DNA from: Octopus bimaculoides
Lineage: Eukaryota
Assembly (NCBI RefSeq): GCF_001194135.2
Contig: NC_068993.1
Span: 59,471,415-59,535,414 of the forward strand
Direction: 5' to 3'
DNA: 64,000 bases
In this document: piece by piece, positions 546 through 55,527 of the stretch
Layout of the letters: every line of letters begins with the position of its first letter
Numbering within the stretch: position 1 is the stretch's first letter
The notes under the pieces: generated by a model
Database searches by the model: none
The model's input: only the letters and a program-made list of their open reading frames with translations
Told to the model about the DNA's origin: nothing
Position numbers and translations under genes: made by a program

Positions 546-1106
546 TATTCTCTACTCTGATATGTATACATGTAAAAATGTAGTGATGTGCAGAACTTCA
601 GTTGTTTAGATAAATGTTTACTTCTACAATTTAAAGAAATGAAATAAAATTTCTGCTGTAGAATCTCTACTATGTCAGTCTTCTCCATCTCATACAGTTT
701 CTCTTATCTTTTCAGGGTGCTAGCTCTTGCTGACATTAAAAGTTATTCACATCCTCGGTACTTATCTTTTTGAGACAATGGAAAATGTTATACAGAACGA
801 ATGTAACCAGGTTTATGTAAACCTGGTGAATTAAGGTGAAATGTATCCCCTGGATGAGATTATTAGCAACATTTGTGTATGTCGCTGTCTAGAATGAGTA
901 GGAGATAATTTTATGTTTTAAGTGGACTTAAATATATTTATAAAGGACTTTGCTGCATTGATCACAGTTGATGGACACAGCAGAGGGAATATTTGTGAGA
1001 AATAAATTATAAAAACAGAAAATAAGAAACATTCATATATTGTAGAGAGAAGAAAAATGATGATGAAATGAGTTAAAAGATGGATTTTTTTTTTAATCCT
1101 TAAGAG

Positions 1107-1847
1107 ATGGCAAAAAATTTAGGAAAGTCTTTATATGTATGTGATATCTGTAACAAGTCATTCACTAAACAATATCATCTTACTACTCATATACGTATTC
1201 ATACAGGAGAGAGACCTTATCACTGTGATATCTGTGGGAAATCATTCAGTCAAAGTGGTGAGTTAACTATTCACAAACGTCTTCATACAGGAGAGAAGCC
1301 ATATCATTGTGATATCTGTGGTCAGTCGTTCATTCGTAAAGATATTTTAACTACACACAGACGTATTCATACAGGAGAGAAACCTTATCACTGTGATATG
1401 TGCAGTAAGTCATTTGCTAAAAGTACTAACTTAACTGATCACAAACGCATTCATACTGGAGAAAAACCATATCATTGTGATTTCTGTGGTAGATCATTCA
1501 ATCAAAATAATCAGCTAATTAAGCACAAACGTATTCATACTGGAGAAAAGCCCTATCACTGTGACATCTGTAACAAATCATTCTCTCGAAATGATGAGTT
1601 AACTGCACACAAACACATGCATACGGGAGAGAAACCATATCAGTGTGATAGCTGTGGTAAATCATTCCCCCGAAATGGTCAGTTAACTGCACACAAACGC
1701 ATTCATACTGGAGAAAAACGATTTCCTTGTGATATCTGTGGTAAAGCTTTCAATCAAAGTAATGTTTTAAAGGGACACAAACGAACTCATTCTGGGAAAA
1801 AAGCATTGATAACACTTGATATAAGTGGTAAGTCCTTTTCTCAATAA
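1107..1847 (+). CDS. C2H2 zinc finger protein, cluster copy A (8 intact fingers, 246 aa, C-terminus truncated by premature stop)
   Basis: Eight C-x2-C-x12-H-x3-H repeats with TGEKPY linkers; ATG homologous to the other copies; decayed finger sequence continues past the stop to about 1950. Confidence 0.9.
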   Translation: MAKNLGKSLYVCDICNKSFTKQYHLTTHIRIHTGERPYHCDICGKSFSQSGELTIHKRLHTGEKPYHCDICGQSFIRKDILTTHRRIHTGEKPYHCDMCSKSFAKSTNLTDHKRIHTGEKPYHCDFCGRSFNQNNQLIKHKRIHTGEKPYHCDICNKSFSRNDELTAHKHMHTGEKPYQCDSCGKSFPRNGQLTAHKRIHTGEKRFPCDICGKAFNQSNVLKGHKRTHSGKKALITLDISGKSFSQ

Positions 1848-2088
1848 TAGGTCAACTAAGCACAAAAGTAGTGGCATCAAGAAAACTATATCACTAATAG
1901 TTGTTTAAACCATTCTCTTAGTAGACTTAACTCTTCACATCTGTATTGCATGAAAGAAACCAACTCAGTGATGTTTGTGGTATTTCTCTCATATACATGT
2001 ATGTTCATACCAAAGCATGACAACCAAACAATTCTTCCTAGTATAAGAATAAGCCTGAAAGTCTTGTGGGGCTGGTTGATGACATTAA

Positions 2089-2172
2089 CCCCAGTGTTCA
2101 ACTGGTACTTATTTTATCAACCTTGAAAGGATGAGAAGCAAAGTCACTCTTGGTGAAGTTTGAACTCAGAAC
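2089..2172 (-). mobile_element. tRNA-derived SINE fragment (family of the 58443-58612 copy)
   Basis: ccccagtgttcaactggtacttattttatc...ggatga...gcaaagtc...tttgaactcagaac matches the near full-length copy. Confidence 0.65.
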
Positions 2173-2239
2173 ATGGACAAAGTGACAACTAAGTAATAAT
2201 GAATTAATGAACCAAAATATTTCATATTATAATCATATA

Positions 2240-52359: not shown

Positions 52360-53127
52360 CTTTTTAGAACAAGAAATAACAGTTAACTCATTGAATAATA
52401 ATTTTTCTTCTTTCACCAAAATATATGTTTCCTGCTTTTCTTTCTATAATTTATTTCTAACAAATATTCCTTCTGCTATATGTCCATCATCTGGATGCAA
52501 AGTGCTTCATAAATCTACCTGAATATATTTAAAATGCAGAATTGTATTGGACTCATTCCAGAGAATGACACACACAAATGTTGCTTAATAATCTTACCCA
52601 GAGGAAATCTTTCAACGTAATTCATTAAATTTATATGAAAATGGTTATATTTGTTCAGTATAACATCTTTTGTCTTAAAAGATGATAAATATTGATGATG
52701 CTTCTGTTGTATAAAAAAAGAAAATGTTTCTGCCAGTTTCAGCTCTGATTCTGAAATAATAAGGAAAACAGAATAAGATTTCAAGAATGCATAAACAGCA
52801 TAAATGATGTATTACTTAAATGGAAACTTAATGGGTTTGTTTACGTTACCGTGACTTAACGGTTGGGCAAAAAGTAACCGACATAATAAGTACCAGACTT
52901 CAAAAAATACGTACTGGGATCGAATTGTTCGATTAAACCTTTGAAGTCTATGCCCCAGCCTGGCCGCAGTCTAATGACTAAATCAAGTAAAAGATACAGA
53001 TCGTGAAAGGTGCGATGGTGTGTGAGGTGCAGTTGGTAGGTTTTGTTTTCTATTTCATTTCTAATGTAAATTGTAAATATTTCAGAACAGGCGGAAGATT
53101 GAAAAAAAAAAAGAAAGAAAAAAGTCG

Positions 53128-53586
53128 GCACTATCATGCTATTAGCTGTCAGAAGTGAAAGTGCTCACTGCCTGCTAGTGAAGTATCTGTCTGTCTGCCT
53201 GCCTGTTGCTGGCCTGTCGTTTCTTTGGCTACTGACAGCTAATACCATGACTGGCCGGAGCGAGCTATACGTCTGTCTGTCTGTCTCTCTATCNNNNNNN
53301 NNNGTTTTCTATTTTGATAGATTCTCACTGTTGAAAATTATATTTTTATATTTTAAATAATTTGCAATTTCAGGAAATGACGCGCGAACTTTCGAGTAAT
53401 AGATAGATAGATAGATAGATAGATAGATAGAGACAGACAGACATATAGCTCGCTCCGGCCAGTCATGGTATTAGCTGTCAGTAGCCAAAGAATCGACAGG
53501 CCAGCAACAGGCATGCAGGCAGGCAGACAGATACTTCACTAGCAGTGAGCACTTTCACTTCTGACAGCTAATAGCATGATAGTGCC
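53128..53586. mobile_element. 459-bp MITE with ~165-bp TIRs, GG...CC termini, 8-bp TSD, in intron 1 of I
   Basis: TSD aaaaagtc at 53120-53127 and 53587-53594; TIR GGCACTATCATGCTATTAGCTGTCAG...; subterminal (GATA)/(GACA) repeats. Confidence 0.9.
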
Positions 53587-53992
53587 AAAAAGTCATATAA
53601 ATCGTGGGAGCTTTCCCGAAAGCGTAATTGAGGGGGACAGAGAGACTGAGACATTTCAAAAGAGCAAAGATACTGAATATTTTTCTTTTTTGTTCTCTTA
53701 GAAGGCGATTGATATGTTTTGCAAAGTAACGGAAAGAAATCTCTGAGGAATTCTATTTTATTAGTGACGACTATTCCGAAAGCCACCCCACTTTTTCGTA
53801 GTATTTCTGTGTTTGATACAAAGGAAATTACGATTCTGATAGAAATTTTGGCGGACAATCGTAATCTATGAAAATCATGAAGGGGAAGAAAAACCCTCCC
53901 AATTCTTTGCTCTTTTCATTCCTCATGAAGAAACGACGGTTATTCCGAAGATCCGTCTTGAAAATATTAATATCGATTTAAACACTATAAAT

Positions 53993-54110
53993 ACTTACTT
54001 TTCTTTTTACCTTTCTATTTTCTTTGATAAATTCGATTAACATGCGACAAAGTTCGTCGCCGGAAATGATTATGGTAAGGTGCTAGGCGGAAGTAACAGA
54101 ATCCGGATAA
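53993..54110 (-). promoter_or_regulatory. Putative promoter/exon 1 of ZNF I, donor at 53998
   Basis: GGCGGAAGT at 54086-54094 and CGCCGGAAA intact. Confidence 0.7.
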
Positions 54111-55527
54111 ACATTTATTATAATAAACAGAAAACCAAAATATGGATACATTTAGAGTTTTATTATTACACATAGTTTCGTAGTTATTCTGTTAACAACT
54201 ATGGATTTATGTTGTTTGTTCCTGCTCGAGCCATGCCTGGTTCATAAGAGCCGGTTTCCCTGTTTCATAGGCGTATAGATTCCCCACCTGGACGGGTTGC
54301 CTGTCCGTCGCAGGTGAGCTGCTAGATGCAGCGGGAGAGATAGAAAGTTGTGGTGAAAGTGCGAATTCGTACTCTCGTTTTGAATGAAAAGAAAAACAGA
54401 AAATCAATGCCATTCTCAGTGTAGTTTAAGGAAGATTTGACTGCTATTTCTAGCAGGTCTAGAGACCACGTAAAGGTTTCCTCCTTCTTGTCTTTCCTGA
54501 TTTCCATGACAACAGACAGGTCCTACCTAAACTACACTGGCAATAAACGTCTTTGATTGGCATATATTACAGAACTGTCTGTGTTTGTGAATTCTTTATT
54601 AATCTCTAGATTAGTCAAAAGAAATTAAGCCGTAACAAAAAGATCAATTGATTTCAGTAATATTTATTGGTATTTCAGGATTCAGTATACATAATATTTA
54701 AGGAGTCTGATAATATCAGGAACCGCCACTGTTATTTCAGGCTGAAAATAGATTTTGCAAGAATGAATTAAGGAGAGTGGAGACAAAAAAAAAATCACAC
54801 CTTTGATAGATTTACTAGAAATTAATAAGAAAGGGGCATTTTTACTGCCATCCTCAGTATTCAATCAACGGACTATAACTAATTTATTACGTTCATGAGA
54901 AGATCTGTGATATGGAAGAGGCAAGTATCCAGGTTCCACTAATTCTCAACATACCAAATATGTCGGTCTTCAGGCTGGTATGTTGAGAATACTCCAGAAT
55001 GTGTGATCTGATTATGTATGTATGTGTGTGCGTACGCATGTGCCTGTGTATGTATCGTTGTTTAACTCGAGATTTGTATAGAAACTCATTTGGAGGGACC
55101 GTTTTTCATTCGTGGGGCTATACTTTACCTGCAACTTAGTTTAATACCACCAAATGGATGATGGCTACCTTTAGTAAGGACCATTCCTTTCTAAGTAATG
55201 GAGTCAAGGTTGAAGACACTTTCTTACTTTTTCCCTACAAGTCTTAGAAGTTTTGGAGTCTTGGGCGCTGTATTTATTTTTCTGACTAACTCAGGAAAGA
55301 ACAAAAAAAAAAAAAAATTAAGGTTTGGTTTGAAAGAGATTTGGTGTCTATTTCTAGCAGTGTGAATGGTCTCATTGAGTTTCCTTCTTTATTCAGTCTA
55401 CGCTATTAATGAGTGTGTTATGCAAATCGAATGCATATATATATATATACACGCGTAAAAATCGAACAATGGGAATGAGTGCTCAACACAGCATCGGTGG
55501 ATAAAAATTCTTTATTTGTATATTTTA

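What the first reader, a model, noticed from the sequence alone, without database searches (positions are those of the whole stretch)
700..54610. Nine-gene cluster of finger-only C2H2 proteins, each duplicated as a complete promoter-intron-CDS cassette
Seen: nine paralogs (7 plus, 2 minus) with 3-15 fingers and an ~11-aa N-terminus (MAKxL(A/G)KSSYEC) and no effector domain, interleaved with at least six TE classes. Established: clustered C2H2 expansions are a hallmark of coleoid cephalopod genomes, and vertebrate KRAB-ZNF clusters evolve against TEs. Inference: this is an effector-less analogue of that system, acting by steric blocking or by recruiting partners through the fingers or the conserved tail.
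Basis: partly seen in the sequence, partly recalled or inferred. Interest (0 to 1): 0.7.

Follow-up and report, generated by a model that had tools for sequence, protein, structure and literature searches.

The report
Octopus zinc-finger gene tandem cluster
This is a tandem cluster of nine recently duplicated zinc-finger DNA-binding genes in an octopus genome, a real but ordinary example of the C2H2 gene expansion already described for octopus and squid.

Summary
The window has exactly nine Krüppel-type C2H2 zinc-finger loci, seven on the plus strand and two on the minus strand. Six look intact (Z2, Z3, Z4, Z5, Z7, Z8). Two are truncated (Z1, Z9). Z6 loses both ends in assembly gaps.

The eight readable copies start with MAKxLxKSSYEC or a close variant. 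Pfam finds only zinc-finger families in all nine.

Each unit is about 5-7.7 kb. It holds a distal conserved block with a GTRAGT donor, a repeat-filled intron, and a ~150-nt block bounded by an acceptor and a donor with stops in every frame. A ~210-270-nt intron follows, then one coding exon whose ATG lies 0-3 nt after the acceptor. No RNA data were available.

Framework residues are under purifying selection (nonsynonymous/4-fold = 0.42, P = 1e-4). Base-contact residues change at about the neutral rate (1.2, not significant). Finger number changes by duplication, deletion and nonsense mutation.

Transposon targeting is untested here and has already been proposed for octopus in print. This is a new member of a known kind, of low interest.

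The parts
716..853 (+). Z1 upstream non-coding exon-like block (acceptor TTTTCAG| at 716; donor lost, GT to AT at 854-855)
1107..1847 (+). Z1 CDS: 246 aa, 8 fingers, then a decayed 9th finger and a premature stop; N-terminus MAKNLGKSLYVC; truncated copy
5196..5337 (+). Z2 distal block (diverged homologue of block B) with donor CAG|GTGAGT, GT at 5324
6650..6797 (+). Z2 upstream exon-like block; the donor region is deleted
7028..7969 (+). Z2 CDS: 313 aa, 10 fingers plus a degenerate C2HC-like tail finger
12584..12725 (+). Z3 distal block with donor GTAAGT, GT at 12712
14270..14416 (+). Z3 upstream non-coding exon-like block (147 nt; stops in all three frames; donor GTGAGA)
14685..15626 (+). Z3 CDS: 313 aa, 10 fingers plus tail finger
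17811..17993 (+). Z4 distal block B core (ACTTCCGCC, TTTCCGGCG, donor GTGAGT with GT at 17928)
19288..19444 (+). Z4 upstream non-coding exon-like block (157 nt)
19678..20973 (+). Z4 CDS: 431 aa, 15 fingers; decayed relic fingers follow the stop (20974 to about 21150)
23997..24172 (+). Z5 distal block B core (donor GT at 24109)
26246..26398 (+). Z5 upstream non-coding exon-like block (153 nt)
26611..27801 (+). Z5 CDS: 396 aa, 13 fingers plus tail finger; AATAAA 89 nt after the stop
29568..29744 (+). Z6 distal block B core (donor GT at 29681)
31243..31380 (+). Z6 upstream exon-like block, cut off by gap 31381-32128
32131..32985 (+). Z6 readable CDS: 285 codons open, 10 fingers (equivalent to fingers 4 onward); start and stop are lost in gaps
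36672..36848 (+). Z7 distal block B core (donor GT at 36785)
38592..38744 (+). Z7 upstream non-coding exon-like block (153 nt)
38987..40012 (+). Z7 CDS: 341 aa, 11 canonical fingers plus tail finger; AATAAA 89 nt after the stop
45336..46529 (-). Z8 CDS: 397 aa, 13 fingers plus tail finger; gap 45067-45310 begins 25 nt after the stop
46773..46926 (-). Z8 upstream non-coding exon-like block (154 nt)
49105..49282 (-). Z8 distal block B core (donor GT at 49168)
52072..52359 (-). Z9 CDS: 95 aa, 2 intact fingers plus a hybrid finger 3/tail produced by an in-frame internal deletion; truncated copy
52598..52750 (-). Z9 upstream non-coding exon-like block (153 nt)
53936..54111 (-). Z9 distal block B core (donor GT at 53998)
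9916..10313 (+). RTE-like LINE 3' ORF fragment, 92% identical over part of its length to an O. bimaculoides protein; a 140-bp stretch is 100% identical to 35933-35794
11903..12238 (-). LINE reverse-transcriptase fragment (Pfam RVT_1, E = 2.9e-9, above gathering)
42929..44020 (-). LTR-retrotransposon pol remnant between the tail-to-tail genes Z7 and Z8 (weak RT_RNaseH_2, Integrase_H2C2 and rve hits, in the pol order)
53127..53586 (.). Foldback/MITE-like element in Z9's intron 1 (about 165-bp inverted arms, 91.8% identical); related sequence lies next to a DDE_Tnp_IS1595 gene in O. bimaculoides locus L001

Best explanation
**What it is.** The window holds a young tandem array of Krüppel-type poly-C2H2 zinc-finger genes in an octopus genome (Octopus bimaculoides or a close relative).

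**How it arose.** A 5-7.7-kb unit was duplicated repeatedly, most likely by unequal crossing-over. One two-gene segment (Z8, Z9) was later inverted. Paralogues have since exchanged sequence.

**Gene model (inferred from sequence only).**
- A distal conserved block ends in a GTRAGT donor. It is either the promoter with a first non-coding exon, or another internal non-coding exon.
- Intron 1 is 1.2-2.3 kb, and its middle has been replaced by different repeats in each copy.
- A ~150-nt non-coding exon follows.
- Intron 2 is ~210-270 nt.
- One exon holds the whole ORF. Its ATG sits 0-3 nt after the acceptor. In three copies an AATAAA lies 89 nt after the stop.

**How it most likely works (inferred).**
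- The products are sequence-specific DNA binders made almost entirely of fingers.
- Selection keeps the zinc-finger fold, while the base-contacting residues (-1, +2, +3, +6) and the finger number are free to change. The paralogues therefore diverge in target specificity.
- Without an effector domain, they would act by occupying sites, or by recruiting partners through fingers not used for DNA, the conserved 9-residue N-terminal peptide, or the conserved C-terminal C2HC-like finger.
- The target class is unresolved. Transposon-derived sequence and neural or embryonic gene regulation are both possible.
For: - **Locus count and arrays:** nine loci with 84-bp periodic arrays, and no others.
- **Domains:** only zinc-finger Pfam families are found.
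- **Unit structure:** the units are collinear, with two conserved islands (distal 83-95% and proximal 94-99% identity among Z5-Z9). Unalignable sequence lies between them.
- **Splice signals:** a polypyrimidine-CAG acceptor is present in all nine copies and a GTRAGA donor in six of eight. The motif GT[AG]AGT[AT]TTTATA[GA] occurs exactly eight times in the window, once upstream of each of Z2-Z9 and on the gene's strand.
- **Non-coding upstream exon:** the upstream exon-like block has stops or frame shifts that close every route into the ORF.
- **Selection:** over reciprocal-best orthologous fingers in four non-overlapping pairs, framework nonsynonymous change is 0.045 per site against 0.106 at 4-fold sites (P = 1.2e-4). 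Contact residues stand at 0.128, against framework with odds ratio 3.1 (P = 9e-8) and against 4-fold sites with P = 0.45.
- **Array turnover:** finger gain, loss and relic fingers after stop codons are seen.
- **Exchange between paralogues:** the nearest paralogue changes from segment to segment, and single fingers are 100% identical between otherwise ~90% identical genes.
- **Taxon:** repeat families are shared at 87-97% identity with an unrelated O. bimaculoides locus, and an RTE-like ORF is 92% identical over part of its length to an O. bimaculoides protein.
Against: - No transcript evidence was available. Exon boundaries, the promoter and expression are all inferred.
- The distal block can be read either as a promoter (two ETS-like ACTTCCG/TTTCCGG motifs) or as another internal exon (polypyrimidine tract plus an invariant AG).
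- None of the eight complete ORF products is present as an exact sequence in a 15-billion-protein collection. These genes may therefore be unannotated or unexpressed.
- Z1 and Z2 have lost the exon-2 donor.
- Z1 and Z9 are truncated, and Z6 cannot be read through.
- DNA binding itself is assumed from family membership.
Confidence: 0.6

Rival explanations
1. The cluster would be a transposon-surveillance system analogous to KRAB-ZNF or FiNZ-ZNF clusters. New paralogues would be selected to bind new transposon families and silence or block them without a classical effector domain.
For: - Contact residues evolve 3-fold faster than framework residues, and finger number turns over.
- The paralogues are young (4-fold divergence 0.08-0.26).
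- Young repeats are present in the cluster, including a 140-bp stretch shared at 100% identity by two RTE-like fragments.
- In the literature, predicted octopus ZNF motifs are enriched in transposon consensus sequences (PMC10547256).
- The C2H2 expansion coincides with a transposon burst about 25 Mya, as summarised in PMC12988792.
Against: - The contact-residue rate is not above the neutral 4-fold rate (1.2-fold, P = 0.45), so positive selection is not shown.
- No repressor domain is present.
- Nothing in the window links any of these nine proteins to any repeat.
- Repeats between genes are expected by default in this genome.
- Expanded octopus C2H2 genes are reported as mainly expressed in neural tissue (PMC12513265).
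Confidence: 0.25
2. A coding exon lies outside the duplicated unit, or outside the window, and is spliced onto each finger exon. The real proteins would then carry an effector domain, and the "finger-only" appearance would be an artefact of reading ORFs.
For: - The ATG sits 0-3 nt after a strong acceptor, so a phase-0 upstream exon could join in frame if the ~150-nt block were skipped.
- The distal block may itself be an internal exon.
- Other annotated octopus ZNFs carry a ~31-aa acidic leader before finger 1.
Against: - The ~150-nt block is closed in all frames that could reach the ATG.
- The ATG in the distal block is missing in Z2, Z3 and Z5, and would add 15 residues at most.
- In the O. 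bimaculoides gene P0188 the leader lies in the same exon as the fingers. No trace of that leader exists in the window (tblastn E > 0.9).
- Every unit, including the two inverted ones, carries its own upstream blocks.
Confidence: 0.1
3. The cluster consists of dead duplicates (pseudogenes), or is inflated by misassembly of one or two genes.
For: - Z1 and Z9 are truncated.
- Z1 and Z2 lack the exon-2 donor.
- Z6 is broken by two gaps.
- Pieces that are 99-100% identical sit exactly at gap edges (33527-33948 against 45059-44638; 10131-10270 against 35933-35794).
- None of the ORF products is in the protein collection.
Against: - Six ORFs of 313-431 codons are open.
- Framework nonsynonymous change is 0.42 of the 4-fold rate (P = 1.2e-4), so the copies evolved under constraint after duplication.
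- Copies differ by 5-25% in sequence, and in finger number and flanking repeats. That is far too much for haplotype or assembly duplicates.
Confidence: 0.05

Closest known systems
Lineage-specific tandem C2H2 zinc-finger expansions of coleoid cephalopods (Albertin et al. 2015 as cited in PMC12988792; Albertin et al. 2022, PMC9068888; Holzinger et al. 2025, PMC12513265)
   Same: - It lies in an octopus genome.
- It consists of many young paralogous poly-C2H2 genes in tandem.
- The fingers sit in one exon.
- The setting is repeat-rich.
   Different: - There is no difference in kind.
- These nine ORF products were not found as exact sequences in the protein collection.
- Their N-terminus is shorter (11 residues) than the ~31-residue acidic leader of two annotated octopus ZNFs.
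- Expression and clade membership were not testable here.
Vertebrate KRAB zinc-finger protein clusters
   Same: - The arrays are clustered and formed by tandem duplication.
- The finger exon is single.
- Contact residues change fast and fingers turn over.
- Paralogues exchange sequence.
   Different: - There is no KRAB domain, nor any other non-finger domain.
- Transposon binding and recruitment of a corepressor are not shown.
- Positive selection at contact residues is not demonstrated.
Cyprinid FiNZ-ZNFs (Wells et al. 2023, PMC10547256)
   Same: - A non-KRAB, lineage-specific poly-ZNF family.
- It has a short conserved N-terminal sequence.
- It shows tandem expansion.
   Different: - FiNZ is a 28-aa acidic domain.
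- Here only 9 residues precede the Y-x-C that opens finger 1, and they are basic (K-rich) rather than acidic.
Finger-only poly-ZNF proteins such as OZF/ZNF146 and the Xenopus XlCGF "gastrula zinc finger" proteins (my own knowledge; such names are given to database hits)
   Same: The proteins consist essentially of tandem Krüppel-type fingers with TGEKPY linkers and no effector domain.
   Different: - Those are single or few conserved genes, not a young tandem cluster.
- No orthology is implied. Identities are about 45-55%, typical of any C2H2 array.
Drosophila ZAD-ZNF clusters
   Same: Lineage-specific clustered C2H2 genes outside vertebrates, not obviously directed at transposons (PMC10547256).
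   Different: There is no ZAD domain; PF07776 is absent.

Membership tests
Krüppel-type poly-C2H2 zinc-finger proteins | Tandem 28-residue units with C-x2-C-x12-H-x3-H | tested here: met
   91 canonical 28-aa fingers in nine ORFs. The Cys and His positions are invariant.
Krüppel-type poly-C2H2 zinc-finger proteins | Conserved TGEKPY/F linker between fingers | tested here: met
   At linker positions 22-27 the consensus residue T, G, E, K, P, Y is present in 86, 76, 85, 80, 71 and 76 of 91 fingers.
Krüppel-type poly-C2H2 zinc-finger proteins | Pfam zf-C2H2 / zf-H2C2_2 above the gathering score | tested here: met
   All nine proteins. For example, zf-H2C2_2 scores 80-418 bits against a cut-off of 40.
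Krüppel-type poly-C2H2 zinc-finger proteins | Sequence-specific nucleic-acid binding | not testable with these tools
   This needs DAP-seq, HT-SELEX or ChIP.
Coleoid cephalopod C2H2 expansion | Located in a coleoid (octopus) genome | tested here: met
   Dispersed repeat families are shared at 87-97% identity with an unrelated locus of O. bimaculoides GCA_001194135.2. An RTE-like ORF is 92% identical over part of its length to O. bimaculoides A0A0L8I6X9. The species itself is not proven.
Coleoid cephalopod C2H2 expansion | Young paralogues in tandem | tested here: met
   Nine copies within 52 kb. 4-fold divergence is 0.08-0.12 within subgroups and 0.20-0.26 between them.
Coleoid cephalopod C2H2 expansion | Expression in neural or embryonic tissue | not testable with these tools
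   No RNA data were available. None of the ORF products is in the protein collection.
KRAB-ZNF | N-terminal KRAB domain (PF01352) | tested here: not met
   It is absent from all nine proteins. The upstream exon-like blocks are non-coding.
KRAB-ZNF | Binding to transposable elements with recruitment of a corepressor | not testable with these tools
   No binding or interaction data were available.
FiNZ-ZNF | 28-aa acidic FiNZ domain at the N-terminus (PMC10547256) | tested here: not met
   Only 11 residues precede the first Cys. They are K-rich, not acidic.
ZAD-ZNF | N-terminal ZAD domain (PF07776) | tested here: not met
   No hit.

The most novel reading that the evidence does not exclude
This subfamily may have dispensed with the N-terminal leader that other octopus ZNFs carry. 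It would then work through a minimal module: the conserved MAKxLxKSS peptide and/or the conserved terminal C-x2-C-x12-H-x-C finger. Alternatively, it could act as a natural competitor that occupies the sites of leader-bearing ZNFs. Either way it would be a new way for expanded poly-ZNF families to act without a classical effector.
Probability: 0.1. Interest if true: 0.55.

Novelty: new member of a known kind. Interest (0 to 1): 0.22.

Why it matters
The cluster adds a cleanly dissected example to the octopus C2H2 expansion. It gives unit boundaries, a predicted three-exon gene model with splice junctions that RNA data can check directly, and a measure of selection. The fold is constrained, the contact residues are free to change, and the arrays gain and lose fingers. 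Paralogues also exchange sequence.

This is useful for annotation, because none of these ORF products matched an exact sequence in the protein collection searched. It also provides a compact test set of six intact, closely related paralogues for asking whether octopus ZNFs bind transposons. It does not change what is known about these families.

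Tried and rejected
- **Homologue searches.** Searches with a whole protein and with the first 116 residues were swamped by generic C2H2 proteins. The best hits were vertebrate KRAB/SCAN ZNFs at 45-55% identity, and octopus hits reached only ~50-55%. They gave no orthologue and no gene model.\n- **Exact look-ups.** Look-ups of eight ORF products and one contig look-up found nothing.\n- **RNA genes.** tRNA and Rfam scans were empty, so no tRNA-derived SINE heads or RNA genes could be called.\n- **Unclassed ORFs.** The mariner-like ORF (2476-2805) and the ORF at 42055-42531 could not be classed by Pfam or by PDB sequence search. 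I therefore do not count them as identified transposon classes.\n- **The ~400-bp repeat downstream of several genes.** It has no inverted termini, so it is not shown to be a MITE.\n- **An apparent conservation anomaly.** The proximal non-coding region looked more conserved than synonymous sites when I used Nei-Gojobori dS. This largely disappeared with 4-fold degenerate sites as the neutral measure, so I dropped it.\n- **A degenerated leader exon.** I asked whether the upstream exon-like block is a decayed copy of the acidic leader seen in other octopus ZNFs. tblastn found no similarity beyond the finger itself. In O. bimaculoides that leader lies in the same exon as the fingers.\n- **Albertin et al. 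2015.** The paper could not be opened. It is cited only through papers that summarise it.

Full report
**1. What is in the sequence**

The window has twelve runs of N. A regular-expression scan of all six frames finds 93 C2H2 matches, all in nine places. The ORF list shows the same nine reading frames. tblastn with one of the proteins finds no tenth locus; three faint hits lie just after the stops of Z1 and Z4. Tandem Repeats Finder reports the expected 84-bp period in eight of the nine arrays.

I call the genes Z1 to Z9.

| Gene | CDS | Strand | Fingers and state |
|---|---|---|---|
| Z1 | 1107-1847 | + | 8 fingers, decayed 9th finger, premature stop |
| Z2 | 7028-7969 | + | 10 fingers plus a degenerate tail finger |
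| Z3 | 14685-15626 | + | 10 fingers plus tail finger |
| Z4 | 19678-20973 | + | 15 fingers |
| Z5 | 26611-27801 | + | 13 fingers plus tail finger |
| Z6 | 32131-32985 (readable part) | + | 10 fingers readable |
| Z7 | 38987-40012 | + | 11 fingers plus tail finger |
| Z8 | 46529-45336 | - | 13 fingers plus tail finger |
| Z9 | 52359-52072 | - | 2 intact fingers plus a hybrid finger |

The eight readable N-termini are [60 protein letters not shown] (three copies) and [12 protein letters not shown]. The last three residues, Y-x-C, already belong to finger 1. Only nine residues therefore lie outside the finger array.

Five copies end in a conserved degenerate finger, C-x2-C-x12-H-x-C followed by two or three residues and the stop. 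Z9 carries a hybrid of finger 3 and this tail, produced by an in-frame internal deletion. Z4 has decayed relics of the last two fingers after its stop. Z1 has a ninth finger with lost cysteines and a stop.

Pfam finds only zinc-finger families in all nine proteins. There is no KRAB, SCAN, BTB or ZAD.

**2. The gaps**

Only Z6 is affected in its coding sequence.
- The left flank of gap 31381-32128 aligns with Z5 up to position -227 relative to the ATG. The right flank resumes at +269, on the same strand and in the same order.
- About 495 bp is expected against 748 N written. The excess of 253 bp could be estimation error or three more fingers. Frame and continuity cannot be decided.
- Gap 32988-33526 removes the last fingers and the stop.

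The other gaps named in the finding lie in repeats, intergenic DNA or intron 1 of Z4. Gap 45067-45310 starts 25 nt after the stop of Z8.

**3. The duplicated unit**

Self-comparison and unit-by-unit comparison show collinear units of 5.0-7.7 kb, measured ATG to ATG. A multiple alignment of Z4-Z9 from the distal block to the ATG has two conserved islands. Identity, computed over Z5-Z9, is 83-95% in the distal island and 94-99% in the proximal one. The 1.2-2 kb between them does not align, because it holds different repeats in each copy.

The proximal island reads as follows in every copy:
- a polypyrimidine tract and CAG;
- a block of 147-157 nt;
- GGT[AG]AGATT;
- about 210-270 nt;
- a second polypyrimidine-AG;
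- the ATG, 0-3 nt later, in an A/G-rich Kozak-like context.

The block has stop codons in all three frames in five of six copies. The one open frame, in Z9, is out of phase with the ATG. The copies also differ by indels. It is therefore non-coding. The donor is mutated in Z1 (GT to AT) and deleted in Z2.

The distal island, which I call block B, was studied in Z4-Z9. Z2 and Z3 keep a diverged homologue. The motif GT[AG]AGT[AT]TTTATA[GA] occurs exactly eight times in 64 kb. It lies once upstream of each of Z2-Z9, on the gene's strand, 1.6-2.6 kb before the ATG in the seven copies whose ATG is readable.

About 75-95 nt before this donor lie ACTTCCGCC and TTTCCGGCG. They can be read as ETS-type promoter motifs. 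Alternatively, the first can be read as a polypyrimidine tract ending in an invariant AG, which would be one more acceptor. I cannot decide between these readings without RNA data.

An ATG in block B is absent from Z2, Z3 and Z5. It runs into a stop in the next block. If that block were skipped, it would add 15 residues at most.

In Z5, Z7 and Z9 an AATAAA lies 89 nt after the stop.

However, the piece next to the intron begins with an acceptor and looks like an internal 5'-UTR exon, not a promoter.

**4. Evolution of the copies**

4-fold degenerate sites differ by 0.08 (Z2-Z3), by 0.10-0.12 within Z5-Z8, and by 0.20-0.26 between subgroups. Nei-Gojobori dS is higher, and I regard it as inflated.

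I used reciprocal-best orthologous fingers in four non-overlapping pairs.

| Site class | Differences per site | Comparison |
|---|---|---|
| 4-fold degenerate | 0.106 | neutral reference |
| Framework, nonsynonymous | 0.045 | vs 4-fold: P = 1.2e-4 |
| Contact residues -1, +2, +3, +6, nonsynonymous | 0.128 | vs framework: odds ratio 3.1, P = 9e-8; vs 4-fold: P = 0.45 |

The fold has been kept by selection since the duplications, so these were working genes. The specificity residues change at about the neutral rate. That could reflect relaxed constraint or diversifying selection, and these data cannot tell which.

Fingers 1-7 are collinear in all copies. The C-terminal half differs by finger duplication, loss and replacement.

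The nearest paralogue changes along the unit:
- block B: Z6-Z9;
- proximal region: Z7-Z9;
- first 253 nt of the CDS: Z7-Z8;
- next 450 nt of the CDS: Z5-Z8.

Single fingers are 100% identical between genes that are otherwise about 90% identical. This indicates exchange between paralogues.

**5. Surroundings and taxon**

Between and inside the units lie several transposon remnants and repeats.
- A LINE reverse-transcriptase fragment (RVT_1, above gathering).
- Two nucleotide-matching RTE-like ORF fragments, plus a third ORF at 22053-22295 with a similar peptide. A 140-bp stretch is 100% identical between the first two, and one fragment is 92% identical over part of its length to an O. bimaculoides protein.
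- An LTR-retrotransposon pol remnant with weak RNase H and integrase hits in the right order.
- A SINE-like family of at least seven copies.
- Another short family of at least seven copies in both orientations, without inverted termini.
- A foldback element with ~165-bp arms.

A 22.6-kb O. bimaculoides locus, fetched through an unrelated ZNF, shares several of these families at 76-97% identity. This shows two things: they are dispersed elements, and the window comes from O. bimaculoides or a close relative. "At least six TE classes" is plausible but only partly verifiable here.

**6. How it most likely works**

By family membership these proteins bind nucleic acid through their fingers. The selection pattern and the turnover of fingers say that paralogues diverge in what they recognise.

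No effector domain is present in the ORFs. None can be supplied by the upstream blocks of the unit. An exon from outside the unit cannot be excluded without cDNA, and I give that 0.1.

The proteins would then act in one of two ways. They could act by occupancy, or through partners bound by spare fingers, the N-terminal peptide or the conserved tail finger. All of this is inference.

**7. Comparison with what is known**

- Coleoid genomes are known for very large, tandemly arranged C2H2 families, concentrated on few chromosomes and expressed mainly in neural tissue. Holzinger et al. 2025 used 1,453 O. bimaculoides sequences. Albertin et al. 2022 describe the genomic clusters.
- Wells et al. 2023 reported that predicted octopus ZNF motifs are enriched in transposon consensus sequences. 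They also described the 28-aa FiNZ domain of cyprinid ZNFs.
- The arms-race reading for octopus is argued in a 2026 essay. Holzinger et al. call it an open question.
- Finger-only poly-ZNF proteins are also known, for example OZF/ZNF146 (my own knowledge).

The present cluster meets every testable criterion of the Krüppel-type family and of the coleoid expansion. It fails the KRAB, FiNZ and ZAD criteria.

It differs from two annotated octopus ZNFs only in lacking their ~31-residue acidic leader.

**8. Verdict**

The feature is real. This is a new member of a known kind, and interest is low.

Noticed in passing
window 49799-49902: There are seventeen copies of CCTAAC, which is the telomere-type TTAGGG repeat on the other strand. 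This interstitial telomeric repeat lies about 500 bp distal to Z8's distal block, between the two inverted genes Z8 and Z9.
   Followed up: no
window 33527-33948 and 45059-44638: The 3' flanks of Z6 and Z8 are 99.3% identical over 422 bp, in inverted orientation. Both blocks begin exactly at a gap edge. The coding sequences of the two genes are only 91.6% identical. This points to very recent gene conversion or to a gap-filling or scaffolding artefact.
   Followed up: partly
window 10131-10270 and 35933-35794; 11084-11230 and 35025-35171: The sequences on both sides of gap 10314-11081 recur at 98-100% identity on both sides of gap 35172-35793. This suggests two very young copies of one RTE-like element, or collapsed repeat reads.
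   Followed up: partly
window 57513-57767 (-) and 61735-61962 (-): Two ORF fragments hit the WSC domain (Pfam E = 3e-4 and 1.6e-5, both just below gathering). They are probably exons of a neighbouring non-ZNF gene beyond the end of the cluster.
   Followed up: no
window 53127-53586: A foldback element with ~165-bp inverted arms (91.8% identical) surrounds the 10-N gap at 53294. Related sequence in O. bimaculoides locus L001 (19993-20354) lies next to a DDE_Tnp_IS1595 transposase gene.
   Followed up: partly
L001 10001-10384 (O. bimaculoides CM046628.1): In the annotated ZNF P0188, a 31-residue acidic leader (MEKELCEDSVEYKMQLKRVNFPDDSKKGKDK) lies in the same exon as the fingers. The deposited gene model then jumps from inside the array to 12540, which looks like a mis-splice in the annotation.
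   Followed up: partly
window 26371-26398 and equivalents in Z4, Z7, Z8, Z9: The ~150-nt upstream exon-like block carries an ATG (MNYVERFP.. in four copies; MEKGFFW in Z4). It is in frame with the main ATG only in Z5 and out of frame elsewhere. These are probably upstream ORFs in the 5' UTR.
   Followed up: partly
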